Below are positions 16,152 through 56,906 of a stretch of DNA of 64,000 nt, piece after piece. This DNA is from Thalia democratica (Eukaryota), in NCBI GenBank assembly GCA_965202585.1, contig OZ241830.1, positions 31,062,001-31,126,000 on the forward strand, given 5' to 3'. The notes below the pieces were generated by a model, which worked only from the letters and a program-made list of their open reading frames with translations, made no database searches and had not been told where the DNA came from. How positions within the stretch are numbered: the stretch's first letter is position 1; each line of letters starts with the position of its first letter. The translations under genes and the position numbers were made by a program.

Positions 16152-19100
16152 TCTAAATAAAGATAGCGTTACTCGTTTTTCTTTCTTCTATTATCATAAC
16201 CAACCGAAAAGTAATGCAAACCTTACATCGTTGTTAATTACAACGGAAGAGCAAACAAAAACTTTTAAACTATTTTTTTAACATTTGAAGTGTATTTTAA
16301 CTTAGTATTTGTTTTCGACTTAGTTGATTTGTAAATAACAAAATGCAAAATAACAAGAAATTTAATAATAAAAGTAAAATAATTAAATTTAATCTTTTTT
16401 TACAAAACGAATTGATCTTTGTATGATCGATTTAAACATTTTTAGTGTTTATGTAGATATAACGACATGTAAAATACTTTATATAGCATAATTGTCATAT
16501 TAAAGAAGACAAGTTATAACATTTTAATGAAAATTTATGTAATTCAGGTTAGCTAATACTTATTCTCTTAAATTTTGATGTTTTACAGCTTATTCTTATA
16601 AATAATAAATAAAGATTGTTAATATTTATCTTTTTATTAAAAAAAAAAATATGGTAATTTAAAAGTTAAAAACTCGAAGGGGATATCAGAATTGTGGTTT
16701 TATTTAGTCAAATCTATAATACAGTGTGTAGGCTATTCAACTAATTAAATAAAGTTTTTGTTAAATTTGTTTAACTAAACTTTTTTGTTTTTTTTTGTTA
16801 TAAAATTGTTTTTATGTTTTCTAGTAGACATCATCAGATATGGTAATAAATTTGACTAAAATTCGCTCAAAGCAACTAACTTGCTCTGTCATTTATCATT
16901 TTAAAAAGGCAAGACCTATTACACTTCCTTCGCTTTTTGTATTATGCAAAATAGTCGTTTCGTACTTTGGTTACAATCTAATGAAAACAACAAAACTAAA
17001 CATGAAACTATTATTGATGACGTATTGATTTCATTCCTTATATAGATCATATTTATTTATTAAATCCTAACTATTTTAATAAAATAAACTTCTATTTAAA
17101 AAGATATACCTAATCAAAGTTAAATTTAGACTTTTGATGTTATTTAAGTTTTGGATGTTAAAACAAAGCTTTAGTCTGTTTTTTTCGGACAAAAAAACTT
17201 AAAATTAAAATATAATTTTGCTCTAAAAACACTTTTGCTATCTAAGTACGAACTAATTGTAAATATGATTTTTCATACCGTTAAAAAAAATAATAAAAAT
17301 TACATAGTTATTTTCTAAATTTACTGTAAATGCAAAACAACTATCACTTCTACGACAAAATAAAACAGATTAGATAGAAACATCGTTGACACTGCGACAG
17401 TATCCGTTTATAAAATATACTCGAGCTTTAAATTTTTAAGTTAAAACTAACAAAAGTCTTTTAACTATTTAAATTTTTCAGTTCAGTTTTTTTTATATAC
17501 TTGACATATAATTATAATTGTATACAATTTTTTAAAGTACCTTCGTAAAGCTTAATGTTATAAACTGCTTAAAACTTTTGTTTTTGTTATTTATCGATAT
17601 AAAAAAACTTTCAACTAACTCAATAGCTAGTGTAGTAAGTTTAAATAATTTCAAATGAATTGTCTTTGATTTAGAATTTAAACAATTTGTGTAAGAATTA
17701 ATAACAGTTTAAATTAATGTTTTAAACATAAAGTTTATTTTGGCCATCTTGAGCTTTTTGTTTTGGTGTTATTGTAGTAAAGTTATAGTTTTTTTTTTTT
17801 TGCTTTAATAATAAAGATTTTCTGCTTATTTTAGTGGTAAGTGGAAATAATTTTTAATGCTGTGTGTAAGTTTTGTAAAATATTTTCTGAATTGAATAGT
17901 TTTTAAATAAAAAGACAATTTTTACAAAAACTTAATTTATACTTTCCTTTTGCTACTGACATTTTTTAAAAATAACAAACATTCTAAGTTACTTTAAAAG
18001 TTTTTACTCTTTTGATTATTGCTTAAAGTCAAAACAATAAAAAAAATGACGAAAGTATTCAAATATCTTGTTTTGTGCAATTTAGTCTCCTGTGTAATTT
18101 TATCTTCGTGCAATTTTGACGTGTTTTCCTTAAATGCACCCGACGAAAGTATTCAAATATCTTTTAGATGAAAGATTGCATAACATTTCTTATACAAACT
18201 GTAAATCTTAGAATGGATTTAAAAATAAACATACTAAATTATATGACAGATATATAAGTATTAAAAAAGTATTAAAATCTTGTAACTCATCATTTTAAAA
18301 GTCTATGTCAAAATAGTTACAGATTTTTATTGTAAATTTGCCACACAAATACTCATGCATGACATTATATTATTCAAACAAGTATTTCTTGTTCAGTATT
18401 CAGAAAACATTATTTTAGATTTTGGTCAGAGTTCCTGGCATAACCAGTAAGGTTCAGAAATAAGTATTAAAAAAAGATATAAATCTCATAAAATATGTTT
18501 ACGTTAAAAATACATGCCTTATTTTAGTATGAGAATTAAAAAAAAATTATCATTATTTAATTTGTTTCTAATTGTAAATGTTCATACACAAATATTAGTA
18601 GATTTATTTTTGGTTAAGCTAAAAAACTATATAATATTTTGTTGTTTGTTTTGGTTGAGTTGTGTTTTAAAAGTTAATGAACTTTAAATATTTTACTTAA
18701 TATATGCATCCTTGGTTATATTTAAAAACAAATATGGTTTTTTACTAAATTAGATTTTGACCATTTTCGTTAGCTGTAAGTAATTTTGAGCACTTTTACT
18801 GATGCAACTGTTTAATACTAATGAGTTATAGCAAGCAATATAATACTATAATAGTATTAAAAAAATTAGTATACTTAATTTGTTAGTATGTGAATTTAAA
18901 TAAATTTAATTTGTATTCTAAAACGGCGTTTGGGAAAATGTTAAATAATGTTCAATTGTAAAAACCTGTATTAACTTTTTATTAATTAAGTATTAGATTG
19001 AATTTTTAATTCGCATGGTTTCTTTACAGATAGTCAATTTCAGATTATTAGAAAAAACTTAAAAATTTATTTAAGGTTAATTTGATTTAAAGAACTTTGA

Positions 19101-19637
19101 TCCTTTTTAAGTGAGTCAATTTTTTAATTTTAAATATAATCAGTCACTGTTTTAAATCTTTATAAATTAGCCTTAACCAATTTGAAACTAAATTGTAATT
19201 AAATAGCCTTGAATATTATCTGTAATTTTTATAAGATTTAGGGCACCTAGTTATGCATATGTAAAAACTCTTTTTTAATTCTAATCTGAAAATTCTAATT
19301 TCTTTGTGTTTATAGATATGGTAAATTATAACGATGTATGCCATAACTCTCATTGTTCTCTGTTTCTTTTTGTTTGAATATATATTTGTATGTATATATT
19401 TTATACCGGAAGTTTCTCATGAAGTAATAATTAACTATTATTGTAGCAGCTGAAAATTTGTTAGTTAACATGATTGGTTAGATGATTATAATAACTTTTC
19501 AATATTATTAATGTGATCAGTAAAACTAATACTGAATTTGTTATGATACATAACAGTACTTAATGTTTTCTAGTTAATTTTTGGTCAAATTAATTGAATT
19601 AATTACTAAGTTATAGCTGAGCAAAGATATATTACTT

Positions 19638-19713
19638 TGTATGTAGTAAAATGAATGGCAATAATGGTTGTAATTATCAACAACCTATGTTATCATTCAT
19701 ACAATAACAAACA
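19638..19713 (+). ncRNA. pri-miRNA-like hairpin H1 (predicted mature arm 5p, UGAAUGGCAAUAAUGGUU...)
   Basis: 21-bp upper stem with G:U pairs. UG at -14/-13. The first 18 nt of the 5' arm are identical in paralog H1', while the 3' arm has diverged. Confidence 0.75.
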
Positions 19714-19762
19714 GTTTATTTTCAATAGTACCTAAAAAGAAGCTCTTGTAACCTTTGAATAG

Positions 19763-19840
19763 TGTTTAGAGCTGAATGATTGCTGTTGTTAGTTCTTTGT
19801 TTTCTGGAGAACTAATTCACTAATCATACAGTTACAAACA
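19763..19840 (+). ncRNA. pri-miRNA-like hairpin H2 (predicted mature arm 3p, GAGAACUAAUUCACUAAUCAUA)
   Basis: ~35-bp stem including the lower stem. Basal UG. CAAC ~15 nt past the predicted 3' cut. 3' arm is 21/22 identical to the paralog; 5' arm has 6 differences. Confidence 0.8.
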
Positions 19841-19881
19841 TTCAACCTACTACATATTACACTTTAATATGACAAAATCTG

Positions 19882-19959
19882 TGCTAGTAGCCAAATGATT
19901 TGAAATGGATACTTCTTTGTTTAAAGAGAAGTATCATTTCAGTCATACAGTTACAAACA
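19882..19959 (+). ncRNA. pri-miRNA-like hairpin H3
   Basis: UGAUUUGAAAUGGAUACUUCUU pairs with GAGAAGUAUCAUUUCAGUCA. Basal UG. Both arms are essentially identical in the paralog. Confidence 0.8.
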
Positions 19960-20010
19960 AACAATCTAAAAGCTCAAGAAAAGAAAAATTAGATAACAAT
20001 AATAAATCAT

Positions 20011-20101
20011 TGCATATTGCAGTAAGGCAATTCTATTAGTTCCCTGTTTAATGTTAATTTTATAACAGGAACTAATATGGTTGTCTTTCTGAATTAATGC
20101 A
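20011..20101 (+). ncRNA. pri-miRNA-like hairpin H4 (type B)
   Basis: AGGCAAUUCUAUUAGUUCCCUGUU pairs with AACAGGAACUAAUAUGGUUGUCU. TGCAT...ATGCA base with basal UG. Confidence 0.75.
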
Positions 20102-20214
20102 TAAATAATTGTTACTTAAGCTTAAATAGTGAAATTAAAGGTTAGTTATAAATTGTATGTTTGTTAAATTTTGATATAAACTAATTTATAGAAATTTTTA
20201 AGTATCTTTAAATG

Positions 20215-20296
20215 TGTTTTGAGCTAAATGATTGATGATAAATAGTTTTTTATATAATCAAAAAAACTATTTCCACCAGTCATACAGTTACAAATA
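20215..20296 (+). ncRNA. pri-miRNA-like hairpin H5 (predicted mature arm 3p, AAAACUAUUUCCACCAGUCAUA)
   Basis: Stem with the shared scaffold and basal UG. 3' arm has 1 difference and 5' arm 4 differences versus the paralog. Confidence 0.75.
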
Positions 20297-20366
20297 AACA
20301 ATCTAAAAACTAAAATGTTATTTAGCAATGAAACTCATGTTGAAAATTCAATGGACTGTCAGCCAC

Positions 20367-20452
20367 TGCTTATATCGACAAGGCATTCATGTTAGATTCT
20401 GTTAAATATTACTTAACAGGAGCTAACATGAATGCCCTACTGATTTATTGCA
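20367..20452 (+). ncRNA. pri-miRNA-like hairpin H6 (type B)
   Basis: GGCAUUCAUGUUAGAUUCUGUUAA pairs with UUAACAGGAGCUAACAUGAAUGCC in a near-perfect stem. Basal UG. Confidence 0.75.
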
Positions 20453-20466
20453 TAGAAAAATGACAT

Positions 20467-20522
20467 GAAGCTAAAATGTTTTAAGAGACTATTAACATTA
20501 GTCATATAGTTACAAGCAATCA
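20467..20522 (+). pseudogene. Internally deleted relic hairpin H7
   Basis: Keeps the scaffold (GAAGCTAAAATG...AGTCATATAGTTACAAG) but has only a short stem. Absent from the unit 2 cluster. Confidence 0.5.
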
Positions 20523-20595: not shown

Positions 20596-20966
20596 CAGGG
20601 TTGTCATAAAACTTAGAATGCTGGAAAAGTCTGGAATTACACAATTTAGGCTAAGAAAAGCTTGAAAAACCCCAAAATTAAAAAAAATTGTAAAAAAGGG
20701 AAAAATATGGGATTTTATATAAAATTCTCTAAAAATCATGGAATTTTAAACAATTTTTACAAGTTAAGTAGATAAATATATTTTGTCACCACCAACCTTT
20801 TTTATTTTTAAAAACCCTTTCAAACTTTAACAGTACATTTTCAGTGTTGCTTTGCTACTTAATTAAATTCCTGACCCTAAACTTAATTTCAAACTAAAAA
20901 TAGACCCAAAAATGTGTACTATGAAAATACCTGAAAGAAATTTTTCAAACACTAGAGGCAACCCTG
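20596..20966. mobile_element. hAT-like MITE (CAGGGTTG family)
   Basis: Termini CAGGGTTGTC...GGCAACCCTG. A truncated ortholog lies at ~53000-53310. Confidence 0.7.
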
Positions 20967-23409
20967 TAGTTAGCTTTGTAAGAATCATTTACACTAGTTA
21001 TACAATTAAATACAAAACAATGTACACAAACTATTAACTGGTCAATATACCATAACTATAATTAGAGCTAGAACAGTTGGGTTAAACAGCTTAAATCTTT
21101 GCAGAAAATATATTTACTTGAAAGAAGTTTAAAACATTTATATTCTAGTAATTAAGTAAAAAATTCATGCTTGTTATTACTGAAGATATGTGTTTGTATA
21201 ATGGCCACTAAACCTGGAATGCTAGAAAAAACTGAAAAAAATCTTGAAACTGACAACTTAAGCTAAAAAAAGCCTTGAATTTAAGAAAAAGTTTTAAAAA
21301 AAAGGAAAAACTTTGAACTTTAAATACTTTTTACACATAAGTTTTGTAAAATTTTGATTAGACTGCAAAATTCTAAAGTAAAGTTTTGTCACAAATATAG
21401 ACACTAAAAATTTTGTCATTACCAATTTTTTTTTACAATTTAAAACATATTTAAAGTAGTTTAAGAGTATCTTTTCAATAGTGTTATACTACTTAAAACA
21501 GTTTTTTTAACCTTATGCTTAACTTGAAATAAATATAGAAAACCTTGTAAAGGTTTCTCAAAAGTAGGTGGGCAACCTATGTATGTAATTTACTAACAGC
21601 TGATACCTGATTCATTTTAAATAGACAAAAATTTTATTTACACCAATTATTTAGTTAATTTATTTACCACATTGTACAAATAATTAAACAAAAAAAAAGA
21701 TTAAAATTAGTTAAGGTAATGTTTTTGAAATAGTTAATTTATTATGAAACTACCTAAGCTGTTTTTGGGTACAAATAAATCATTACTGATAAAAAAAAAG
21801 TTGTTAATCTTATTAATACCCACTTGCCTATGTTAAAAATTTTATTGTGTCCTTTTTCATGAAAGTTATGTTAGGAGATAATTCTTTAGTTTAACTTTAG
21901 CTAAAAATAGTAAATCATAGTTTTTAAAATTATTAAGCTAGCAAAACTATTTTCGTCCTGCAATTTGAAACAATAAATTTGTTGCTCCAATTTAGTTGCA
22001 ATGCAAGATAATTATTTTTAACAAAAAAAAAATCTGTATCTATTCATAGCTACAAAATTAAAGTAGTAAAAACTTTGATCGTAAAAATGTGAAAAAAAAA
22101 TTTTTAACAAACAAATGATTTAAAACTTTATTTCATCATTTTTTTAGTTGTTAATATGCCTGCAAACTTTAGGAAACATTTTTTGAGTTTTAGATTCTTA
22201 CTTTATGTACCAACTAGTGAATTTGGTTTGAAGTAATATTTAAAAAAAATTCGTTGAGTACAAAATTGGTAAAAATTATAATTTGTCTATAGCTTGAAGT
22301 GAAGGTTCTTATCAAAACTGTTAAGTTATTCTATATTAAGGTTTTCTACTGACGGTAAAGTTTTATTTAGTGCCAATTATAATAAAATTTAAAAAGATTT
22401 AAGTTTCAATTTACATTTGTAGTTAGAAGTGAAGAGAAAAAAGTTCTTAGACGTATTTAAAGTTAGTTTTAAAACTTCTAGTAGACCAGGCCAGAGATTT
22501 CCGTAAAAAAACTGTTTCAGAAACTTAGGGCGCATAAGCAATAATGGTAAGTGGGCACAAAGCCACAATTTGAAACTTATACTAGAAATTCTTGAGTTGA
22601 TGATATAGAGAAAAAACAGTTTTATGCTTATTTAACAGTTCTTTTTTAAGAGAGGGAGCCATTGCTTTTAAATTTTTATTAATAGTAGCCTTATGAAAAA
22701 ATCTTTTAAATACAGTGATCTACAGAATAGTTTTTTAGAATTAATTTTCATGATCGATTTATTTGGCAGAGATTTCAAAAGGATTGCTTTTCTACTAGTT
22801 ATTAACCTTTTACTTTAACGCCCTATAACTAGTTATTATTTCGTTAAATAGTTAATTTTAAGGATACCCTGTTTCAAATATAACATATATTTAATGTTTT
22901 TAAAACAACTCTAGAATTACTCAAAGATCTAAAAATTTTAGTTATATTAGAGCTCAGCTGACAATTTCAAAATTGCCACCTATTTTAATTGTGATCTCTC
23001 CCCTAACTTTTTAAAATCTCCCAAAAGGCGATATCGCCTTCTATGAGTAACCCACACCTGATCTTAGACAAGCTCAAAATTGCAACTTATTAGTTGATAA
23101 TAATAAACCTCCTTCATTATAGATCACTTTTTAAAGCATAGACCAAAAGTGCCTAATATTTGTTATCGAACGACAAAAAAAATTTGGATTAATTGGTCAT
23201 AGGAAATGGTTTACGATAGGACCTTTCGGTTAACGAGTCGTACAACACTTGGTTATTATTTGACATTTGATCTAAAACGAGTTCAAAAATGGACAGTTTG
23301 CAAAATTAAAAACAGTAATAAAAAGTTATTGTGAAACTTTAGAAAACAAAAATTATTATCTTATAAAAGTCTTATCGAGTAACATTTTTTTTATTTTTGG
23401 AAAAGAATA

Positions 23410-23620: not shown

Positions 23621-26600
23621 GGCTAAATTTTATAATAAGTAGATAAATTATAATAAATATTTTTTTTTGTTTTGATTCGAAATTTTCTTACTCTATGAAG
23701 AGGTTTTATAGAAATACGATTACTCTCAAACAATTTGAAAAAGTATTATTCATACTATCTGTACAAATTACTTGGTAGAAAAGCCATACATTCGCCCCTC
23801 AGGAATCAACGTTCTCCATTGGTTACGTTCTCTTTTTAGTAACGCACTTAGGAATTTTTAAGAAATATGGAATAAAAAATTTAATGCTCAATATTTTATG
23901 TTTTTTGTAACATAAAGTAGAAAAATTGAAATGAATTTTTAAAGAATTTTAAAATAAATATTAAAACAATAAATAAGAGGAGATATATTTTTAGTTATTT
24001 TTATATTGTTGCAGTTTTATTTTGTTATATCTATAAGGAGCCTATAGATAGAATCTAATCATTTTATTTTATACTTTAAGTGTTTTATCCATCTTTTAAA
24101 GTTTAAACTTTTAAATCATATACATTACAATGCTCAAATCCTCAAAAAGTTGTAGCATAATGTTACATTTAAACTTAACACATATCTTACTTTTAGCTAA
24201 TTCGTTCTTTGCCAACCTTCTTACAAATTCGTTCTTTGCCAACCTAAGATTAAACTTGTCTTGTATCGTACTACAGAAAAATTCAAGACAAGTATAACCT
24301 TTAACCTTAAGTTGGTAAGAAACAAAAAAAAAAAAAAATTTGTATTCACTAATAGAACTTTTATTTACAACATTTTACATGTATGTACATGTCAAAAAAA
24401 AAAAGTGTTTTCTTAACAAAAACTTGAAAAGTCTTCAATCATAAGGAAATAAACCAATAAAGTAGGTATGTATGTTTAATTGCGTTTAGTTACGCACTTT
24501 TGTGGTGGACACAATGTTTGAAGATTGGCGAGAGGTGACTGTACATAATAAGCATATACAAAAGTACCAAAATAAAAAGTATTTGTTTAAAATGAATTAA
24601 GTATGTTTATTTTCAAGCTAAAGATTATGAAAAGATAAGGCTTTGCTTATACTCAAAATCAGATGTTTGTATATTAGAAATTGTTTATTAATACAATATT
24701 TATCATTTAACGTCAACTAAAACTTAATAAACTTATTGTTGTCTAAAATTCAGATAGTTTTTCAAACATTTATTCTCTTTAAAAAAACTAGCTCAAAACT
24801 AGTTTGTTAAAGATTAAAACATTTAATCGATTAGCACAATTACATCTTAAATGATTCCTTTCAATTTGTATTTTTAAGATTCATTTAATAAAAGTTTACA
24901 AAATAATTAATATATATTGTTTTATGACCACTAAATTTACCTGTTTTTTAATTTTCATTACTTATAAAAGTTATCTTGTTCAAAATTAGCTTAATGGAGC
25001 TCACAATTGTTGTTCGATATAAACAAAAAATATCTTGAACGAATTCTTTTAAATTGTTTAAATCAATTGTTTATTTTGATTAAATAAAACAATTTAAAAA
25101 TATTCTTATAACCTTGAAATTCAATTAATCTTTTGTATGTTTTTTCTTCTTAAAGTAAGCACAGTATCAAATTAACTTAGTGAGCTTAAAATTCTTATTC
25201 AATTTTTCAATTTTTTTTCTCAAAATGGTTTTGAAAAGTCTGTATATTAATTTAATTAAAGTCGTAAAGGTTATTAAAACAAATTAAAAAATAAACTTGG
25301 TTCATATAAAGCTTTTTTTGTTTGGTATTAAAGGTAGTTTTTTATTATAAACTAGTTTTTGTTATAATTTGAAATTTTTTAAACAAGACCGAAAAGCATA
25401 AAACAAAAAATAACTAAAGAAGATACTCAGGCAATTTGTTTTTGGTAGTGCTGTATTAATGTTTACTACCAACCGACTATAATTATTTATAATCATTTTA
25501 TTTATGTAGTAGTTTATTTAGTTTTAACGTTTTTCGCTTTTGGTAAAAAAACAATAAATTGATATACCTGGCATTGTTTGATTTAAATTTGTTAAATACG
25601 TGATTACTTCTATATCATTCAGAGATGGACAACATACCATCAGTAAAAAATCTTTCTGACCAGAATTTCATTTTGTAATTTTGAAAACTACTACAGAACA
25701 AATAAATTAAAAAACATGAGTGAACAGAAAAATAGAGTGTGATTCAAAAATAAGTATGACTTTACAACCAGGTTTATTATTAAAACTTTGAATTATCAAT
25801 TACAAATATGATCTTGAACAAATTTTTAACTAACTTAGTATATGTTGACAAAATAAAACGGCCTGCATAAGTCCATGACTTATAATCCTTGCTAGATAAA
25901 ACAGACTGTAGCATCTGACTCACTGGCTAGAGAAATTATCTTAATCTGAAGGCAAATCTTTTTTGAAATTTATTTTTATAGTTTTTAGTTAACGTTTTCT
26001 TCAAACTTTAACGCAAACAATATTAGGATTAAAATAATTACTGTTCTGTAATGAATAAAACAAAATGTAAGATCCCTGTATTTTAAAGTCTAAATTTTGC
26101 TATGTCAAAAAGCTAATCAAAAACTGTTTTTTGCATATGAAAAATTTCATCTATAACTGTTGAAGCACATAAGTAGCTGTTATATGAAATACAATTGATA
26201 AGTTCAGCTAATGATGTGTGTAAAACATAAATTTTTAATGAGCTACTCATTGTTAATTCAGTACACACTCAGAAAGAAGTATAATTTTTACAATTCATCA
26301 TGTTTTGTGCAGTTTGATAGACACATAAATGTCTGCGTTTAGATATTTAAGTGCTTTTGTTGCTAGTAGTACTGATTTTTAAATCTTTGTGCCTGAGTGG
26401 AACTAACTGTATTTATATATTTTAGTGTGCTGTTTCTAAATAACATAAAACAAAATCTAACTGTACATTTGGTTCTAATTGATTGTTCTCATCCACATTT
26501 AATATATACTTTGAACAGTTTTTAACACTGAAACGAAAAAAGATCTTTTTATATATGTTTTTTTTTAAGACTATGTGTACATATTGTAACAAAGTATTTT

Positions 26601-28019
26601 TAAACTCACAGAAAGTTCTAAAAAATGAAACTTTCCTCTAAAAATAAACAAATTTAATTGTTTTTAGTGGTTCGAAAACATTACTGTACAAATTAATGAG
26701 GGAATCCTAACATAAAACGTAACTGAAAAATGAAAAATATACATTAAGCTGACAGGCAAACAGATTAAAAATAGAACTAATAGAGTAGAATTTATGGTAT
26801 CAATAAAAACACAAAGATAAAGATCTAACTTCGAGACATCAAAATTCAACAACATAGTCACAAAGTATCATAATAATATAATATTAATGGAATAAACTTC
26901 AACATTTAATTATTTGTGAAAAATTCGACGAAATGTTTTTTTTTAAATAAAAGTGTTTCTAACACATACAGTTGTTTTAATATAATAAAGATGAAATTAA
27001 AAGTTTCTGTACAACTTTTTAAAATCTAACTTTATTGACGAAGAACATGAAATATTTTTACTAACCTAACTTTTAATACTTATAATAAAATTACCATGCT
27101 GATTTTAAATACAAACAGTTTTTTAGTCTCGAAAACTTAATATTATAGACCAGTCTTTTATCAACCTGAATTTTTTAGAAGATTCCATTTGGATAATTAT
27201 TATTCACAAAAATTTTACGGGACCTTTGCAACATATAAACTAGAATTGGATACCTCGTTTTCTGTTTTTCATAAGGAAAAAAAAATTGATGGTGCTGCTC
27301 GTCTGTAACAATAAAAAATACCATATTTAAAAACAAACTGATTTTAACATGAAAAATCTTAACAAGAGCGATGAATTAAAATAATAATAACTAACTTATA
27401 AAAATAAAAAAAGCTATTTCTACCCATTGCATAAATTTTTTTGCGCAAGTTTATCTAACACTCTGAAACGCGTACTGTAATAAACTTAAAAGATGTGTTA
27501 ACATTGTTTATTGAACGATAATAGAATAAACGCTCAAAAAGTTTGGTCTAAGGACCTGGTGTACAAAGGAACCTTTCGGTTATCGAGTCGTACACCACGT
27601 TGTAAGCTAGTTGGAAGCTCAGGTTTTTCCCTAATCACGGGTATTTCCCTAAACTGAGCCTGTAGTTTTTGGTCTGCTCACCATATTTGTACTTTTTTGA
27701 ACTAGTGTAGCTATGTAAATAAGGCAGTAAAAAATAGTGAAAGGTTTCTATTTTAAGATTCATGGTATTTTTTTATTCACTTGATTGTTAACCGAATGTT
27801 GAGCAGTTTACATTCAATAATACTTGATCGTATTTTAATATAATGAGACCAGGATTATCATGTTAGTAGCTACTTTCTTCCTCAGAAAAGGAGTATTGCT
27901 ACAGTATCCCTATCCTTATCTATTTTTAAGGCTACACCATTAGAATTAGTTGCTAACAAGACTATTTTGAAACATGTTGTTAAATTTTTGTACAAAAAGT
28001 TTATTAAAACAATAAAAAT

Positions 28020-32258: not shown

Positions 32259-34272
32259 TAAAAAGCAAAATGTTGTTTAATATTTTTCTACTTAAACTAA
32301 ACACTTTTTTGTTCAAGCAAAATTTTTTTATTTGTGTTCTTATTACATAACCTTTAATAAATCACTTTTATTTACCTAAAAAGATTAAGTACAACAAATA
32401 TACGAACCTATTACAATATAACTCCATTTATAGTAGAAATAAATTTACTATTTTACTGTAAAAACTACTATAAATTTTTGTTCATTTAAAATAGTAATAA
32501 ACTTAAATAATACTTTCAAAAAACTCTATAGTTAAACAAATACTTTAACAAAAATAATTGAGTTAAATAGTTTAAATAAACTCAAAAAATATTTAATTAA
32601 AAACAGAAATTAGTAAAAGCAAGCAGAAAAGTAAAAAATATTTAATTTTTAAATGCGTTAAAACATTCTATAAAATTTAATTAAGTTTTTTTATCAAATT
32701 TATTAATCATTACTTTTTTTTATTAATTACTTTTTTCAGTTAAAATACAGTTAAAACAGCATAAAAACATCCTATTGACCTTAAAAAGATTTAAGTGCAT
32801 TGTTAATTGAATATTGTTTTAGGTAGAAGTACATATAAAGCAGTATTACAACGTTCTAAACAATTTAAAAAGATTAAAAGTAATAAAACCTAAAAGTATA
32901 TTTAGTCAGAAGACACCTAAAACAGCATTAAAACGTTCCAAAGAATATTGAAAGGTTAATAAATAGATATAACTAAAAGAACTTGTAGCAATGAAGAACA
33001 ATAAAATTTTAAAAAAGAAATTAAATTTTGTTTACAAATTAAGATTATTTTAATTGTGGGAATTTCAGTCAAAACACTTAGCATATTAAGAAATATTAGC
33101 AGTTTTTCCTCAACACCGTTTTACAGGGCTGCCAATTTTTTTTTTGCAAAATTTTCTCCGGGGTTTGAAAACTTTACGTTTTTGGGTTTATTTTTAGTGA
33201 AAAGTTAAGTTTAAGGTAAAAAACTACTTTATTGAATGACAAAAAAAGCTTTCAAATTATTTGGTCCTGAGATTTGTTTCACGAAAAACCTTTCGGTCAA
33301 CGTGTCGCACACCTTTAGAATGCCGTTCAACGTCTTGTCCAGGACTTTGTCTTAAATTGTCAAGGACCTTCCTTATCCAGAATATTGTCCTAAATAGTAC
33401 AAAAACATTTAAAAGATACTGTAAAGCTACTTGTAATGTGTTTTTTTTTATTATTGATGATGACTACCAAGATTATTAATATTAAAAATCTAACAATCAA
33501 TAAATATAAACATTTTAGGTGATTAAACAATGATTTAATCAATGTTATCCTTATTTAATCCTATTTACATTCACAGCAAATAATAAACAATTTCTTTACT
33601 TTAAGTTTACTTTATGTATCTAAAGAATATCTAACTACTACTCGCATTTACAAAGTAACATTATATTTTATTATTTTCTGCATCTTCAAAATCTTTTTTT
33701 ATTCTTCAAATTTTATAATCAAAATTTTAACTCAATATAGTAATACAAATTAGAATAAATGTTCAAGATTGTTTGATTAGCTTTTGGTTTTTATGTTCTG
33801 TTTAATTTTTTTTTAATAACTGATGAATCCAGTTAATAAGACATATTATGATTTAAAACTTAATTTATCAAAATTGCACATTTCTATCATTAAATGATAT
33901 TTAATTATCAAAAACGAGGAAGTGGAAATGCTGTAAACATACAAAAAGTTCAAAAAATTGTCTAAATTGTCTTGCTTAAATCTGCACCAATTATGAGTTA
34001 CTATAATTAAAATAACTAATAGAAGTTGTTAAGAAAAGAAGTAAACATATTTTTATTTGTATCCAAGACCGAAAGTGATAGAATTCGGTAGAAAACTTCT
34101 ATAACTCATAAAAAACAATCTAAATTTGTGTAAGTTTAATTATTTTTTTTTATTACAAAATAACTATAAATAATAAAAATATGTAATAAAATTTTTTTTT
34201 AACAACCGTTTATCAATTACTTTAGTTATTTAAATTTAAATAATACTTTAAAATATACTGTAAGTAACCTGA

Positions 34273-34333
34273 CCTAGGTGTGCACTTTGATCACATCATA
34301 AAAGACGTACTCAACCGACAGTGCACACCTAGG
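34273..34333. other. 61-nt stem-loop with a perfect 14-bp inverted repeat
   Basis: CCTAGGTGTGCACT-N33-AGTGCACACCTAGG. Degenerate paralogs at ~60657-60718 and ~63753-63810. Confidence 0.7.
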
Positions 34334-35199
34334 ATTTTTGTCTTATTACCTACATTAAGCCTATTACAGACATAGTAGAAGCTACTAAAGTTTACAAATG
34401 ACTCTTAAAACAAAATGCCTTAAAACAAAAGCTTCCACCATAATAACAATACATATTTTTTAAAGTATATTAGAAGTCTTGAATATTTATTTAAGATATG
34501 TGTTTAAATAAAAGTATTTATCTTTGTATATTTGTATTTATATGAGCCCACAAAGATTTATAAAATCTGTCGTAATTTGTTATATTTTTAAAATTTACAT
34601 ACTACATACAATTAAATAGTTATTTTAAACAATTAAAGATATCAAAGGTAGAGTAAAACATACATATGAATAAAGGAGGATAAAATATTGAGGTGCTCAT
34701 AGTAGACTGAGGTTTCCATAGTGAATAAAAGCAGTGATGGTTTTAAGAAAAAGTGCTGAAAACTTTTGTTAATTTTAGAAGTATCTTACTTCGTTTACAT
34801 GCAACTATTATAGCTACCATAAATTCAAGTTAATTTATTTTAAATTGTAATTTTCATATTTTTTTTAAGGTAGATTTTGTTAAATTTTTTATTATTTTTG
34901 TTTCTATATTTATAATTAGGATAAACAAATTTAAGTTACACTATTTGTTAATTCTTTAAAGAAAAAAATATTGTTATTTTAAATAGTTTTTATACAGTTT
35001 TTATATTTATAACTTTTTTATGTTTACTTTATTTTTATTTTATAACTAGTACAGTACAATTTAATTTCAAATCTACATTTTTGTCTTATGACTTCTGAAT
35101 TTTTGTTACATAAGTACAAACAAGTTCATACCAAATCGGCAGATTGTGCTATTTGAATGAGACAGAAGATAGTTAAACAATAAAAAACAATATTTAGAA

Positions 35200-42200: not shown

Positions 42201-43431
42201 AATAATTAGTTTTATTTTTGTTTTATAACAGTCATTTTACTATAGTAATTTTGATTTTATATAGCTGTATCCTGGGTATGACTTGATAACCGAAAGGTTT
42301 TGTGTACACAAGGTCCTTGGACCAAACTTTTTGAGCATTTTTCTTTTTGTTCAGTAAACAATATATATATAAGTTTATCATTCATCCATTATCATTGTAA
42401 GACCATTACTAACACAAACTAAAACACTTAAAAGTTTAAGTTTTAAAACTGATAATGCATAACTTATTATTCTTAAAGAAGTTGTTGGGAAAAATATAAA
42501 AAAATAGTTATCTGAAACTTTATACTAGGTTATTATAGAACTTTTGATAACTTAGTAATATATTAGCTTACACTAGATTACTTATCAACTAAAACCAAAA
42601 AAATAAAAAAGTGTAAAACTAAACTACACAACTCAAAAGTAATCAAACATGTTTACTTATATTATTTATTAATAATAAAATTAGTTATAAAATTGATGTT
42701 TAAAATTAAAAGAACAGTAAACGTTTTCAAACTAATTTTATCCTTTTAAATATTATATAACATACCTTTAAAACAAAAAAGATTTTAAATTAATCTAAAA
42801 ATATTGGCAGAATCTATCAGTTAATATATTTAGAAAAATGAGTTTTTTTAGTTTAAAAAAAAAGTGGTTACAAAAAAGAATGGTCAGAATATAATGGTAA
42901 TTTAGTTTACCAAACATCACTTGGATACAGTTAAACGTCATGTTCTTGTCAGTTTTATCGATAAAATAAATCTTTTGAAAATGGTGATTTTAGCATAAGT
43001 TCACATTATCAGTATAAAACTGAGATTAAATTTCTCTTTTATGATAAAAACCTTTAAACTAACTACAGTATACGGCACACAATAGTTCAGCACTGAACGA
43101 AATATGCGCAGTTGTTACAGGTCCATCAGCAGTTATTGATTTGTTACATGAAGAAATTCTCCAGCAGATCTGAATCAATAAAAAATTATAAAACATCAAA
43201 ACAAACTTTGTAGTATAGAAATCGCTTCTATGTTCAATCAACAGACTTCTACATATTTTTTTATGAAGTACAATAAAACTATAGTAAGACAGTTGAAATA
43301 AAAAACAAAAAAATAGTGATATTAGCTTTCATGATACATAGAGACCCAAATTCTTAGCTAGGTATAATACACCATAAGCGTTTTAATATCAATTTTTAAT
43401 AGCAAAATTTAAAAATAGGCTATAAATAGAC

Positions 43432-51359: not shown

Positions 51360-52172
51360 GTAACTTTATTTTAGTTATGTATAGTAATAATGTTATTTTA
51401 AAAATTTTTACCTCTTGAATGTTTATTTACATTCAAAAATTGTTTATTATTAAAAAGCAATGTCATTTAAGATAAGAAATCGAAATATTTTTGAATAAGA
51501 TCTTATTTATATAAGTGTTTAAGTTATGCTGTTTAACTGAATTTTCAAAGACCAAATTCTAAACAGATTATATTCACAAAATATGCTAAATTTAAAAAGA
51601 TAATTGACATAACTCTAATTGTTCTCTATTTCTTTGGTTTTGTTTAAGTTTGTACCGAAAACTGTTTAAACTGTAATAGATTTTTAGTGTGGAGCAATCA
51701 TTTGGTTATAACAGCTGCACATAGTTTTTCTATTGTATTTAGTTAACTGAAAAAATAAAGTCGCCCCTGAACTTTACATCTTAATAGATATGCAGACATA
51801 TAAACTTAGTGTTAGTTTAAAAGTTTTAATTCTATTTAAATAGATTCACTTTATTGAACTTCATAAAAAATGGTGTAGTTGTTTTAAATTTTAGGCTAAA
51901 TTTTTTAAACTTTTTCAAAATGTTTTAATTAATTTTTTTTTTAAAGAAGTAGTATGTTTTACAGTTTTATGTATGGCTTGACTACTTAAGTGGTTTATAA
52001 TAAAAGTAAATTTCAAACAATTTAAAGTGTCTAGCAAAATATTATAATAAAACTGTGTTAATATATAATCAATGGTTTCTAATAAATTTTTAGTAAAATT
52101 AATTAATTGTTTAGAAAATGTTTATTAGTTATTTAATAAACATTTTTTTAAATTTAATTAGTTATCTTACTT

Positions 52173-52249
52173 TGTATGTAGTAAAATGAATGGCAATAAT
52201 GGTTCTCATAATAAAAAAAACATTTTTTCCATTCATACAATTACAAACA
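52173..52249 (+). ncRNA. pri-miRNA-like hairpin H1'
   Basis: 5' arm matches H1. The 3' arm has changed but still pairs. Basal UG. Confidence 0.7.
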
Positions 52250-52298
52250 AACTTTCTTCAAAAGTACCAATCAAGAAGTTCTTTTGACCATGGAATAG

Positions 52299-52376
52299 TG
52301 TTTAGAACTGAATGATTAGCGCTATTAGTTCTTGGTTTTCTGAAGAACTAATTCACTAATCATACAGTTACAAACA
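52299..52376 (+). ncRNA. pri-miRNA-like hairpin H2'
   Basis: 3' arm AAGAACUAAUUCACUAAUCAUA. Basal UG and downstream CAAC. Confidence 0.8.
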
Positions 52377-52411
52377 TACAACCTATTACTGATGCGATGT
52401 GATGATTACTG

Positions 52412-52489
52412 TGTTTGCAGCTAAATGATTTGAAATGGATACTTCTTTGCTTAAAAAGAAGTATCATTTCAGTCATACAGTTACAAACA
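52412..52489 (+). ncRNA. pri-miRNA-like hairpin H3'
   Basis: Near-identical to H3 in both arms. Basal UG. Confidence 0.8.
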
Positions 52490-52537
52490 AACAATCTTCA
52501 AACTGAAAAAAAGGACTATACAACAACAATTAAATCA

Positions 52538-52627
52538 TGCATATCTCAATAAGGCAGTTCTCTTAGTTCCCTGTTTAATTTAATTCAAACACAGGAACTA
52601 ATATAATTGCCTTGCTGATTTAGTGCA
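52538..52627 (+). ncRNA. pri-miRNA-like hairpin H4'
   Basis: Most substitutions versus H4 interchange G:U and Watson-Crick pairs, so the stem is retained. Basal UG. Confidence 0.75.
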
Positions 52628-52739
52628 TAAATAATTGTTATGAAAGCACCAAGTGTGAACAAATTGGTTGGTGATAATCTTAATATGTCTGTTCATCTTT
52701 TGTAAAATACTAACAAAAATATTTGGTGTTCATTAAGTG

Positions 52740-52821
52740 TGTTTTGAGCTAAATGATTGGTGGTATGTAGTTTTTTATCTAATCAAAAAAACTATTTTCA
52801 CCAGTCATACAGTTAAAAACA
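52740..52821 (+). ncRNA. pri-miRNA-like hairpin H5'
   Basis: 3' arm AAAACUAUUUUCACCAGUCAUA. Basal UG. Confidence 0.75.
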
Positions 52822-52888
52822 AATAACCTACAAGGTACCTTCATTCAGCAAAGAAATTCAAAATTGAAATTTGGTGGCAATTAGTTAC

Positions 52889-52980
52889 TGCTTAATTCGA
52901 CAAGGAATTCATTTTGGTTTCCTAGTTAATATTGGCTTAATAAACAGGAGTTAACGTGATTACCCTACTGAGTTATTGCA
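52889..52980 (+). ncRNA. pri-miRNA-like hairpin H6' (weakened stem)
   Basis: Homologous to H6 but with several mismatches and bulges. Confidence 0.5.
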
Positions 52981-55900
52981 TAAGCATCTGTTATTCTTTA
53001 ATCCTGGAAAAACCTTAAATTTGACAACTTAGGCTAAAGCAACTTTAAAAAAAGTCACATTATTACCAGAAATAACCAAGAACTTAAACACAAAAGCCTT
53101 ATACATAGATTATATTTTTTGTCAAATTTATTTTTAAGTACATTTAAAGTAGCTTAAGAGAATTATTTTAATGTTATTATACTCTTTAACACAGTTTTTT
53201 TCACATTATTTAATTTTTAACTAAAAATAGACCAAGAAGGTGTTTTTTTAAAATTTAAAAGAAATTCAAAAAACCTAGAAAATGTTTCTCAAAAACCAGT
53301 GGCAACCCAGAAATATATTTTTAGAACTACTTCGTTACTATAAAAGAACTTAAAATCATGTAATTTCTAGTTTATAAGTAGAAAAAGTAATATATACTTT
53401 TATTGGAGGGTGGCCACTAAAAAAAACTAGAAAATTCTTGAATTTTACAATTTAAGCTTAAAATACTAGGATTTTGAGATATTTAAAAAAAGCAACTGGA
53501 AAACCTTGAATTTTTTATAATTTTTACAAATTTTGTAAAATTTTTATTAAACATTAAAAATTTATCATAAAAATTTAAAATAAAGTCATTATTAATTTTT
53601 TTCTTATAAAACCTTATAAAGTTGCTTAACAGTATTTTTTCAGTACTATTATAATACTTAATCCTCTTTTTACTTTAAACTTAACTTCAAATTAAATATA
53701 GATCCAAAAGTGTACTTTCAACAACCTTAAAAAAATCCAAACAACCAAGAAGAAATTTCTTAAAAACCAATGGCCAACCTGTGTTTGTAATTTACTTATT
53801 GATGATAAATGATTCTTTTAATAAAGCTAAAAGAATATTTTACATCAACTTTATAATTGCAAACAAGCATTTTACATACAATTATACAAAAAAAAAGAGA
53901 AAAATTAGCAAAGGGAATGTTTTCGAATCAAAACTATACTATGATAGTAGCTAAGCTATTTGTAGTACAATTAAACCCTTTATTGATGAAAAAACTTGTT
54001 ATTTCTATTAATGGCCACTTGCCTATGTTTAGAATTTTCATTTGTCCTTTTTAATGAAAATTGTGTTAGAGGTTATTTTATTTTAATTATAGATAATAAT
54101 AGTAAATGATAGTTTTAAAATTTATTAAGCTAGCAAAATTATTTTTGTCCTGCAATTTGAAAAATAAGTTTGTGGCTTCTTTTTAGTTGAAAGGGAATCA
54201 CTTCTAACCAAAATAAAATTCTGTATTTATACATAGCTACAAAATTAAAATAGTAACAAACGACTTTAATTGTAAAAAAATCTAAAAACAATTTCTTCTC
54301 AAATAAATGGTTTAAAATTTTATTTCATCAGTTGATAATATGCCTGAAAAATTTTGTAAAATTTTTTGAATTTCAGAATCTTACTCATGTACCAACTAGT
54401 GACTTTGAATTGTTTTTAGTACAAAATTGGTAAATATTATAATTTATGTATAGTTTGAAGAGATGGTTCTTATCAAAGTTGTTTTGTAAATCTATTTTAA
54501 GTGGTTTCTACTGCTGATGAAGGATTATTGAGTGTCAATTAAAAAATGGAAAATGTCAATTTACATTTGTAGTTAGAGGTGAAGAGAAAAAAGTTCTTAG
54601 ACTTACTTAAAAGTAGTTTTAAAACTCATAGTAGACCAGAGCTTCCCGTAATCAACTATTTCAGAAATTTAGGGGCCATAAGCTAAAAATGTAGAGGTAG
54701 GGGGGCTCAATGCCACAATTTCAAAATTAGATTGGATTTTATTGAAGTGATAATAAAGATAAAAAAAGGTCTTAAGCAATTTTAACATTGGTTATTGAAA
54801 GAGTGGTCATATTTTTTTAATGTTTTCAATGGTGGCCCTATGAAAGTTTTGTTGGAAAATTCTGATCTACAGCATATTTTTTTGAGTTTATCTTCGTTAT
54901 CAATTTTTTTTCAGAAAATTTAAAGGGATTACTCATTTACTAGTTATTACCTTTTTCATTTTTTGCACTATCGCTACTTATTATTTCCAGATATCATTAA
55001 TTTAAAATAACTGTGTTTTATATCTCATCTATATTTAATGTATTCGAACAACGTAAAAATTAATCAAAGATTTAAAAACTTTAGTTATATAGCTCAACTC
55101 ACAACTCCAAATAGCACCTTTTTCTTACTTTTTGCTGGTTTCTACCTCTCCCTAAACTTACTAAAATCGCCCCAAAAGGCGATATCACCTCCAATGGGAA
55201 ACCTTCATGGGATCTTAGACAAGCTCAAAATTGCAATTTATTAGTTGATAATAATGTAGCTCCTTAATTATAGATAACTTTCATAAAGCATAGGCTAAAA
55301 GTGCTTAGTATTTGGTAATGAACAACAAAAAAAAAAACTCAGACTAATTGAGCAGAAAATAGAACATTTCGGTTAATGAGTCGTACACCACTCCTTAAAC
55401 TGGGTCTAAAACAGATAGTTTGCAAAAATAAAAACATTAATTATACGTTATTCGAAATTTTAACTAACAAAACAAAAAGCTATTTACTATAAATGTTCTT
55501 CTTTCCGGATTAATATTTGTAATCATTTTTCTTATGAAAATACCAACAGAGGCACGCTGTGATTTCTTGAGTATTTCGGCCAGTTCCTTTAGCTGATAAA
55601 AAAAATTAAAGCATCATATTCGACTATAATCATATATAATCTTTCATTTTAATAAAGAACAGATAAATTTCGATTGGAATTAAGAATGCAATAAAGTTCA
55701 TACATACCATACTTTTTTACCTTGAAATCATTTAAAATGACGTTTCCAATGAAAACCGGGCAAAATTTTATGGTAAGCTTGTGTTTTTGTTAAGCTTCTA
55801 AATTTATATCCTTTATTAATGAGTAAAATGGATATATGAGTAGTCTTCGAATGTTTTTTAAATAAAAAGAAATGTTTTGCTACCTAAAGAAATTAACTAC

Positions 55901-56906
55901 TAAAACAGGCTATCATAATGAATATTAACAAAAAATACCATAAACAAAGTTATATCTGTAACAAAACTTAAGAAGTTTGAATTTAAACCAGAAGTTTATA
56001 GGGAAGAAAAAGTCTTTGCTAATCCTAAAGATCAGATTTTTGAAAATACACTTTTGCAAATTTTTGACTAAGTTAATTAGGCTGATACCAATATAATGAT
56101 GACTTTAAATTTGATTTAAAAATTTAACTCGTTTCAAGTTAATAAAATGTAGTTGTTAACTTTTGTTCGATTTAATAAAAAAACAATTTTGACCTTAAAT
56201 CTCAGATATATTTTTTACATCTTAATGTTTAAAATTTTCAATTTTTTCTAAACTAGTCTAAAAAGCCTATAATTATTGTCAAACGATTAGCATTAGTCCT
56301 AGACAAGACATTAAAAGGTATCCAATTGGTGTACGTCTCGATAACCGAAAGGTTATTCCAGCATCAGGTCCTAGGACCGACAAATTTAAGCATTTTTATT
56401 GTCGTTCAATAAACTTATAAGAAATAGCTTTATAATAAACAAGAAATTTAGTTTCTTGGTATTTGCGATATTATATTAAATAAAATAATACTTTTTTATT
56501 GAATGACATAAAAAGCGCTTAAATAATTGGTCCAAGGACCTAATGCATAAAAAAAAACTTCTTTTGGCTATTGAGTAGCACAACATTTATATACCTTTTA
56601 ATATCTTATCTAGAACAAATGCTAAACATTTGTAGTAATACAAAATAAGTCTTTACTTTAGAATAAAATCCAAAGTCCTTATGAATAAAAAAGTTAAGTC
56701 ATTTTTAATTTTTAACTTTAAACTTAAAGGATACATTTATTTTTAATAATCAAACTATTTGCAAGTAGAAATTTTGAAAATAGTAATGTCGTTTAATACA
56801 AAAAATAAGAAATTGCAAGTAAGTTTAAATAACAAAAGAATATTAAAAAAATTGATTCAGTAAATGATACTAAATTTTATTATATTAAAAAATATTTAGT
56901 CTAGCT

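What the first reader, a model, noticed from the sequence alone, without database searches (positions are those of the whole stretch)
19638..20452. Polycistronic cluster of six Microprocessor-shaped miRNA hairpins
Seen in sequence: six hairpins within 815 bp, each with a ~22-bp upper stem plus a 12-14-bp lower stem. In all 12 hairpins (this cluster and its paralog) a UG sits exactly at -14/-13 relative to an aligned arm start (UGA... in type A, AGG... in type B). G:U pairs favour the + strand. Established knowledge: a ~35-bp stem and basal UG(-14/-13) are Drosha/Pasha substrate hallmarks. The downstream CNNC motif is present only in some (CAAC in H2 and H2'). Inference: a lineage-specific miRNA polycistron. 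I recognise no match to miR-100, miR-2022 or miR-2030 and cannot tell whether it is already catalogued.
Basis: partly seen in the sequence, partly recalled or inferred. Interest (0 to 1): 0.9.

Follow-up and report, generated by a model that had tools for sequence, protein, structure and literature searches.

The report
Six-hairpin microRNA-like gene cluster, duplicated
Six closely spaced RNA hairpins of microRNA-precursor shape, kept under selection in two old duplicate copies, are most likely an ordinary lineage-specific microRNA gene cluster, but no small-RNA data could be obtained to prove it.

Summary
Window 19632-20460 carries six hairpins with 34-42-nt stems that fold far better than shuffles. 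A 77%-identical copy lies at 52160-52982.

Both copies sit in an old tandem duplication of about 31-32 kb.
- Flanks are 61-70% identical and spacers between hairpins 62%.
- Loops are 76%, the arms 84-87%, and the 14-nt basal flanks 88-89% (stems vs spacers plus loops, p=1e-14).
- Compensatory changes keep the pairing.
- UG at -14/-13 is present in 12/12 hairpins, and CNNC only in H2.
- DNA-run depth shows the hairpins are not a high-copy repeat.

I found no match to any Rfam family and none of 18 arm strings in the papers searched.

- The G:U strand bias is not significant (39 vs 26, p=0.14).
- The cnidarian framing is probably wrong. Eight follow-up notes on this genome call it a tunicate; I did not verify this.

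The only runs available behaved as DNA, so expression, exact ends and the transcribed strand remain untested.

Best reading (about 0.65): a lineage-specific polycistronic miRNA cluster of one diverged hairpin family. It is a new member of a known kind, of modest interest. The scan noted this same stretch twice before, and its paralogue at 52173-52980 once.

The parts
19632..19716 (+). H1A, type A hairpin. Proposed pre-miRNA about 19652-19701. It has the weakest lower stem of the six.
   Evidence: MFE -20, 17/22 of 5p paired. The 5p arm is 20/22 identical to the paralogue and the 3p arm 16/22.
19757..19843 (+). H2A, type A hairpin. Proposed pre-miRNA about 19777-19828. CAAC follows 15-18 nt after the proposed 3' cut.
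   Evidence: MFE -28.4; + strand 10 kcal/mol better than -. 3p is 21/22 conserved and 5p 16/22, with pair-keeping changes.
19877..19962 (+). H3A, type A hairpin. Proposed pre-miRNA about 19896-19947.
   Evidence: 5p is 22/22 and 3p 21/22 identical to the paralogue.
20005..20105 (+). H4A, type B hairpin. Proposed pre-miRNA about 20025-20088.
   Evidence: MFE -33. Four pair-keeping changes against H4B: G:U to G-C, A-U to G:U, and U:G to U-A twice. 3p positions 2-8 are unchanged.
20210..20299 (+). H5A, type A hairpin. Proposed pre-miRNA about 20229-20284.
   Evidence: 3p is 21/22 conserved and 5p 18/22.
20360..20460 (+). H6A, type B hairpin with a nearly perfect stem. Proposed pre-miRNA about 20381-20439.
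   Evidence: 38-nt arms; MFE -35.9 on +, -36.8 on -.
20443..20521 (+). Degenerate seventh type A unit. It keeps the 3' scaffold but has no good hairpin.
   Evidence: family D1, (22 bits, E 0.07; z -1.6).
19560..19597 (+). Conserved block of about 40 nt upstream of H1, containing TTTTCTAG. It may be a splice or trans-splice acceptor or a promoter element of the primary transcript (inference only).
   Evidence: 85% identical to 52071-52104, while neighbouring spacer has diverged.
52167..52252 (+). H1B. The upper stem is partly lost.
   Evidence: 13/22 paired, 19-nt loop.
52293..52379 (+). H2B, intact.
   Evidence: (92 bits).
52407..52492 (+). H3B, intact.
52532..52631 (+). H4B, intact.
52735..52824 (+). 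H5B, intact and better paired than H5A.
52883..52988 (+). H6B, weakened (MFE -19 against -36 for H6A).
53782..53866 (+). H7B, an extra family member about 800 nt downstream of cluster B. Its upper stem resembles H5 (18/22 to the H5A 5p arm).
   Evidence: 26 bits, E 0.01; MFE -27.2, z -4.9.
21581..21665 (+). Decayed homologue of H7 in copy A. It no longer forms a hairpin.
   Evidence: 70% identity, z +1.05.

Best explanation
This is a lineage-specific polycistronic microRNA cluster.

Shown:
- There are six pre-miRNA-sized hairpins of one diverged family. I call H1, H2, H3 and H5 type A, and H4 and H6 type B. H2 and H4 still share the upper-stem core UUAGUUC/GAACUAAU.
- The hairpins lie 119-204 nt apart.
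- The whole cluster was copied with a unit of about 31-32 kb.
- Since that duplication the stems have been held under selection while loops, spacers and flanks drifted.

Inferred:
- One RNA polymerase II primary transcript, probably of the + strand, carries all the hairpins.
- Drosha-DGCR8 (Pasha) measures each ~35-bp stem from its basal junction, where an invariant UG sits, and releases pre-miRNAs of about 50-64 nt.
- Dicer then makes ~22-nt duplexes, and one arm is loaded into Argonaute.
- From arm-specific conservation, the likely guides are the 3p arms of H2, H4 and H5, the 5p arm of H1, and either arm of H3.
- Depending on the exact 3p start, H2-3p and H4-3p may share the seed GAACUAA.
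For: Folding: z -12.5 for the cluster and z -4.2 to -7.0 per hairpin. The hairpins are 3-6 sd outliers of the window's 100-nt folding background.

Geometry: stems span 34-42 nt, and 17-20 of 22 arm nucleotides are paired in 10 of 12 hairpins.

Selection: the duplicates' flanks are 61-70% identical. Within the cluster, spacers are 62%, loops 76%, 5p arms 84%, 3p arms 86.5% and 14-nt basal flanks 88-89%. Fisher p=1e-14 for stems against spacers plus loops, and p=6e-15 against the downstream flank. Seven of the 12 islands of at least 90% identity over 40 columns in the whole duplicated unit lie in the cluster.

Covariation among the eight type A copies: 89% of cells are paired against 34-55% with slid partners. 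Seven pairs changed on both sides, and 0/500 shuffles reached the observed score.

Arm asymmetry: 3p positions 2-8 show 0 changes in H2-H5, while 5p positions 2-8 changed in H2, H4, H5 and H6. H1 is the reverse.

UG at -14/-13 is invariant in 12/12 hairpins, within an otherwise variable lower stem.

Variants in three DNA runs that fall in stems either turn G:U into A-U (19788, 19926) or lie in an internal loop (19686/7). The others lie in loops or spacers.

The hairpins are not high-copy. Summed contig depth over them is 157-416 (up to about 1000 over H6), against about 82-340 in most non-repeat flanking bins and 1e5 for true repeats nearby.
Against: There is no expression or processing evidence at all. 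No miRNA-Seq run was listed, and the three runs found cover the whole 5.9 kb evenly at haplotype depth, so they behave as DNA.

Strand asymmetry of G:U pairs is not significant. H6A and H4B fold as well or better on the minus strand.

Predicted apical loops are 6-9 nt in cluster A. Both are at the short end for Microprocessor and Dicer substrates.

CNNC is absent from most hairpins.

No match to any Rfam miRNA family reaches half of its gathering score, apart from mir-7 at 27/52.
Confidence: 0.65

Rival explanations
1. The same miRNA cluster is transcribed from the minus strand, or from both strands as at some insect Hox miRNA loci.
For: Hairpins are nearly self-complementary, so both strands fold. 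H6A (-36.8 vs -35.9) and H4B (-36.1 vs -31.3) fold better on the minus strand. The G:U count of 39 vs 26 is not significant. By my reading of the sequence, the minus strand of type A also puts a UG near -14, because the lower stem reads GUUUGU there.
Against: Summed MFE favours + by 33 kcal/mol, and five hairpins favour + by more than 5 kcal/mol. A G:U pair in the type A lower stem is kept in 7 of 8 copies, and a U:G in the next helix in 4 of 8. Both would be A-C mismatches on the minus strand.
Confidence: 0.12
2. It is a selected array of structured hairpins that is not a canonical miRNA source. For example, it could be a hairpin-RNA (endo-siRNA) locus, a source of miRNA-offset RNAs, or a structured part of a long non-coding RNA or intron that binds proteins.
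For: Selection acts on pairing and on the basal 14 nt as strongly as on the putative mature arms. Among within-cluster paralogues the scaffold is 65-89% identical, but the upper stem only 46-50%. There is no read evidence for 22-mers.
Against: Stem length, spacing, arm-specific conservation of positions 2-8 and the invariant basal UG are what Microprocessor substrates show. Endo-siRNA hairpins are usually far longer (established knowledge).
Confidence: 0.13
3. These are inert palindromic tandem repeats or relics of a foldback or MITE-like element. Their similarity between the two copies would then reflect gene conversion or chance, not function.
For: The six units descend from one hairpin by tandem duplication. 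High-copy repeats lie immediately downstream at 20652-21045 and 21440-21636. H1B, H6B and H7A have decayed.
Against: Depth shows no high copy number at 90% likeness or above. Conservation tracks the stems six times in register and drops in every loop and spacer, which conversion tracts would not do. Changes are pair-preserving. An 18-mer of the scaffold found only chance hits in metagenome contigs.
Confidence: 0.07

Closest known systems
Polycistronic animal miRNA clusters made of paralogous hairpins (for example mir-17~92 and the insect mir-2 cluster)
   Same: Several ~35-bp hairpins lie 120-200 nt apart on one strand. They arose by tandem duplication. Arms and basal stems are conserved while loops and spacers are free to vary. 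The whole cluster has been duplicated.
   Different: There is no sequence or seed match to any family I could test, since all Rfam hits are far below threshold. Expression has not been shown. Among paralogues the lower stem and the first helical turn are better kept than most of the mature region.
Lineage-specific tunicate miRNAs (Ciona, Oikopleura, Salpa thompsoni novel miRNAs; PMC5174732, PMC5006418)
   Same: If the genome is a tunicate, as other notes say, it belongs to a group reported to have both lost and gained miRNA families (PMC5174732). A private cluster fits that pattern.
   Different: None of the 18 arm strings occurs in any searchable paper. miRBase and MirGeneDB could not be queried, so I cannot tell whether these hairpins are catalogued.
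Cnidarian miRNAs
   Same: AT-rich genome and pre-miRNA-like hairpins.
   Different: Eight follow-up notes on this genome identify tunicate proteins. Krishna et al. 2012 (PMC3592418) found only one two-locus cluster in Hydra, so a six-hairpin cluster would have been notable there. In a tunicate it is not.
MITEs and foldback elements
   Same: Short palindromic units in an AT-rich, repeat-rich region.
   Different: Low copy number by depth. No terminal-repeat or target-site-duplication signature was examined or seen. Selection is on pairing.

Membership tests
Canonical animal miRNA gene (Ambros 2003 / MirGeneDB criteria) | Hairpin in which at least 16 of about 22 nucleotides of the two arms pair, without large bulges | tested here: met
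   17-20 of 22 are paired in 10 of 12 hairpins. H1B has 13 and H6B 15.
Canonical animal miRNA gene (Ambros 2003 / MirGeneDB criteria) | Discrete 20-26-nt reads from both arms with homogeneous 5' ends | not testable with these tools
   No miRNA-Seq run was listed. The runs found are DNA-like contigs.
Canonical animal miRNA gene (Ambros 2003 / MirGeneDB criteria) | 2-nt 3' overhangs of the Drosha and Dicer cuts | not testable with these tools
   This needs small-RNA reads.
Canonical animal miRNA gene (Ambros 2003 / MirGeneDB criteria) | Stem of about 35 bp flanked by single strands (Microprocessor substrate) | tested here: met
   34-42 nt from the outermost pair to the loop in 10 of 12 hairpins.
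Canonical animal miRNA gene (Ambros 2003 / MirGeneDB criteria) | Terminal loop of at least about 8 nt | tested here: inconclusive
   MFE loops are 6-9 nt in cluster A. With 22-nt arms, 6-20 nt remain between them.
Canonical animal miRNA gene (Ambros 2003 / MirGeneDB criteria) | Conservation of arms above loops and flanks | tested here: met
   Arms are 84-87% and basal flanks 88-89% identical, against loops 76% and spacers 62% between the paralogous clusters (p=1e-14). Only presence at about 95% identity could be seen in a second organism's DNA run.
Bilaterian pri-miRNA sequence motifs (Auyeung 2013; Fang and Bartel 2015; recalled from memory) | Basal UG at -14/-13 | tested here: met
   12/12. 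However, the copies are paralogues and the UG lies 1-2 bp inside the predicted stem.
Bilaterian pri-miRNA sequence motifs (Auyeung 2013; Fang and Bartel 2015; recalled from memory) | CNNC 16-18 nt downstream of the 3' cut | tested here: not met
   Only H2A, H2B and the remnant carry CAAC. H3 and H5 have CAAUC (read).
Any described miRNA family in Rfam 15 | Score at or above the family's gathering threshold | tested here: not met
   There were 0 hits at gathering thresholds in the whole window. The best sub-threshold hits were mir-7 at 27/52 bits, mir-3047 at 26/53 and mir-1490 at 25/75.
MITE or other high-copy foldback repeat | Many dispersed copies in the genome | tested here: not met
   Summed contig depth is 157-416 over H1-H5 and up to about 1000 over H6, against about 1e5 for true repeats 200 nt away. 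The likeness threshold was 90%.
Box C/D snoRNA | C box RUGAUGA near the 5' end and D box CUGA near the 3' end, closed by a short terminal stem | tested here: not met
   Type B has CUGA and a terminal UGCAU stem but no C box. Only H5 has UGAUGA. The Rfam hit to SNORD79 has E 9.3.

The most novel reading that the evidence does not exclude
The array may be a natural 'constant backbone, variable guide' system. The Microprocessor-facing part (UG, lower stem, first helical turn) is held fixed through repeated duplication. The upper stem is free to change by paired substitutions, which lets the lineage mint new guides quickly. Other notes on this genome report larger hairpin arrays (about 39 and about 25 units, not examined here). 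Together these could mean an unusually expanded, fast-evolving hairpin small-RNA repertoire in this lineage.
Probability: 0.15. Interest if true: 0.6.

Novelty: new member of a known kind. Interest (0 to 1): 0.3.

Why it matters
If confirmed by small-RNA reads, this adds up to a dozen miRNA genes to a poorly annotated, fast-evolving genome. These would be two clusters of one family, plus an extra member.

It also gives a clean natural experiment. Two old duplicates show which arm, which seed and which basal elements are constrained, and hairpins at different stages of decay (H1B, H6B, H7A) show how cluster members are lost.

It does not open a new kind of biology.

Tried and rejected
Expression:
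- The second run search, restricted to miRNA libraries, listed nothing.
- The single read-laying run showed that X1-X3 cover the cluster and its flanks evenly at about 40x per haplotype. They are DNA-like, so they give no RNA evidence.

Known families:
- Rfam at gathering thresholds gave 0 hits, and E-value scans gave only generic hairpin resemblance.

Literature:
- Eighteen 15-19-nt arm strings, in U and T forms, were absent from all searchable main texts.
- Supplements of the Hydra, cnidarian and salp papers were either not held or carried no sequences.

Relatives elsewhere:
- An 18-mer of the scaffold in metagenome contigs gave 10 chance hits with no hairpin.

Organism:
- The window has no ORF of 120 aa or more and no tRNA.
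- The gypsy and SRSF pseudogene fragments and one Atlas look-up did not identify the lineage.

Targets:
- There are no near-complementary sites in the window outside the clusters.

Rejected readings:
- snoRNA: no C box.
- Pol III units: T-runs lie inside the H2 loop and the H5 arm.
- High-copy MITE: contradicted by depth.
- The conserved islands at 21902-23114 are not significant hairpins.

Full report
OBSERVATION

The stretch 19620-20470 folds into six separate stem-loops. Its MFE is -218 kcal/mol against -152 +/- 5 for dinucleotide shuffles (z -12.5). Each hairpin alone has z -4.2 to -7.0 on the + strand.

A 100-nt sliding fold of the whole 64-kb window has a mean of -10.5 +/- 4.5 kcal/mol. 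Five of the six hairpins reach -24 to -36 (H5A, at about -21, fell below that scan's cut-off), and the corresponding hairpins of the second cluster are the other dense group of outliers. The 5' side of each stem spans 34-42 nt in 10 of 12 hairpins, and 17-20 of the 22 proposed 5p nucleotides are paired.

The paralogue is real. 19625-20454 aligns to 52160-52982 at 77% identity (alignment A1).

CONTEXT

The window is 24% G+C. It has no ORF of 120 aa or more and no tRNA.

Colinear weak matches with an offset of 30.7-33.2 kb run through most of the window. The two clusters therefore lie in two units of an old tandem duplication of about 31-32 kb. The flanks of those units are 61-70% identical, which gives a neutral baseline.

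SELECTION

Identity between the two clusters, by region:
- spacers between hairpins: 62%
- loops: 76%
- 5p arms: 84%
- 3p arms: 86.5%
- 14 nt below each arm: 88-89%

Stems against spacers plus loops give Fisher p=1e-14. Stems against the better-conserved downstream flank give p=6e-15. Seven of the twelve islands of at least 90% identity over 40 columns in the whole duplicated unit lie inside the cluster.

Changes in stems are often pair-keeping. One example is H4, with G:U to G-C, A-U to G:U, and U:G to U-A twice.

Among the eight type A copies, 89% of cells pair, against 34-55% when partners are slid. Seven pairs changed on both sides, and no shuffle in 500 reached the observed covariation score.

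Variants seen in three DNA runs point the same way. 19788 and 19926 turn G:U into A-U, 19686/7 lie in an internal loop, and the other listed variants lie in loops or spacers.

FAMILY STRUCTURE

H1, H2, H3 and H5 (type A) share a lower stem and first helical turn: 5' UGUGUUU.GAGCUAAAUGAUUG and 3' CAGUCAUACAGUUACAAAC. H4 and H6 (type B) share another.

H2 and H4 still share UUAGUUC/GAACUAAU in the upper stem, so all six probably descend from one hairpin. This is read directly.

Among within-cluster paralogues the scaffold is 65-89% identical, while the upper stem plus loop is only 46-50%.

A covariance model of type A found three further things:
- a degenerate unit at 20443-20521;
- an extra member, H7B, at 53782-53866 (z -4.9);
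- the copy A homologue of H7B at about 21581-21665, which has decayed.

H1B and H6B are weakened.

ARM ASYMMETRY

Between the two clusters, positions 2-8 of the proposed 3p arms are unchanged in H2, H3, H4 and H5. Positions 2-8 of the 5p arms changed in H2 (three changes), H4, H5 and H6. In H1 the 5p arm is kept and the 3p arm has decayed.

This is the pattern expected of guide and passenger strands. It suggests 3p guides for H2, H4 and H5, and a 5p guide for H1.

UG at -14/-13 is present in all 12 hairpins and is the only invariant dinucleotide in the 16 nt upstream. TG frequency in the window is 4.7%, and other offsets reach at most 4/12.

The weight of this is limited for four reasons:
- the copies are paralogues;
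- the anchor was chosen afterwards;
- the UG lies 1-2 bp inside the predicted stem;
- by my reading of the sequence (not computed), type A also gives a UG near -14 on the minus strand.

CNNC is present only after H2 and H2', and in the remnant.

STRAND

Three other observations favour the + strand:
- summed MFE is -326 on + against -293 on -;
- five hairpins are more than 5 kcal/mol better on +;
- a G:U pair in the type A lower stem is kept in 7 of 8 copies.

I put the + strand at about 75-80%, given that this is a miRNA locus.

NOT A REPEAT

In three runs that behave as whole-genome DNA, coverage is even at about 40x per haplotype with two haplotype contigs. The hairpins have summed depth of 157-416, and up to about 1000 over H6. 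That is like the non-repeat flanks, whereas 20652-21045 and 21440-21636 reach about 1e5.

WHAT COULD NOT BE SHOWN

I could not show expression, read ends, overhangs or the transcribed strand. No miRNA-Seq run was listed, and the listed runs gave no RNA signal.

The real cuts may lie 2-4 nt lower in the conserved AAUGAUUG region.

KNOWN OR NOT

Rfam has no match in the window at gathering thresholds. Sub-threshold hits (mir-7 at 27/52 bits, mir-3047 at 26/53, mir-1490 at 25/75) are generic hairpin resemblance.

Eighteen arm strings occur in no searchable paper. miRBase and MirGeneDB could not be queried.

ORGANISM

First readers guessed a cnidarian. Eight follow-up notes on other windows of this genome identify tunicate proteins, and one says 'probably a pelagic tunicate'. 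I could not verify this from this gene-free window.

The point matters for interest. Krishna et al. 2012 (PMC3592418) found only one two-locus miRNA cluster in Hydra, so six hairpins would be notable there. Tunicates are reported to have both lost and gained miRNA families (PMC5174732), so there it is expected.

VERDICT

This is a real, selected, duplicated array of Microprocessor-shaped hairpins. It is most likely a lineage-specific miRNA polycistron (0.65). That makes it a new member of a known kind, of modest interest, with small-RNA reads as the missing proof.

Noticed in passing
window 5600-31700 vs 36500-62400: Most of the window consists of two units of an old tandem duplication of about 31-32 kb. 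The matches are colinear with an offset of 30.7-33.2 kb and 58-74% identity.
   Followed up: partly
window 20652-21045, 21440-21636, 18091-18287, 22425-22621: Very high-copy repeats lie just downstream of the cluster. Summed contig depth is up to 3-4e5 in three DNA runs, with many loose ends and joints at 20761-20927. The family was not identified.
   Followed up: no
window 21902-21953, 22024-22062, 22257-22299, 22403-22462, 23055-23114: Five further islands are at least 90% identical between the two duplicated units, and four of the five lie wholly in bins of ordinary read depth. They are not significant hairpins. A 16-nt perfect palindrome, AAGGCGATATCGCCTT, lies at about 23025. They may be exons or regulatory elements of the same transcript, or a shared old element.
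   Followed up: partly
window 34250-34345: A strong lone hairpin has a 14-bp perfect core (CCUAGGUGUGCACU/AGUGCACACCUAGG). It is more stable on the minus strand (-46.9 kcal/mol, z -5.4). It could be another small-RNA hairpin or an inverted repeat.
   Followed up: partly
window 24222-24340: A long hairpin (z -5.3 on the minus strand) abuts an A15 run, which suggests a retroposed or foldback element.
   Followed up: no
window 27503-27597, 42276-42362, 56327-56414: A short repeat is present in direct and inverted orientation at three places, at 76-85% identity. It overlaps a strongly folding segment at 27501-27690.
   Followed up: no
window 4434-5092: Broken reading-frame fragments resemble SR-protein RRM domains. 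The Atlas look-up matched clusters with retroelement integrase C-terminal/SH3 domains.
   Followed up: no
window 19560-19597 and 52071-52104: A block of about 40 nt upstream of H1, containing TTTTCTAG, is conserved at 85% in both clusters. It may be a splice or trans-splice acceptor or a promoter element of the primary transcript.
   Followed up: no
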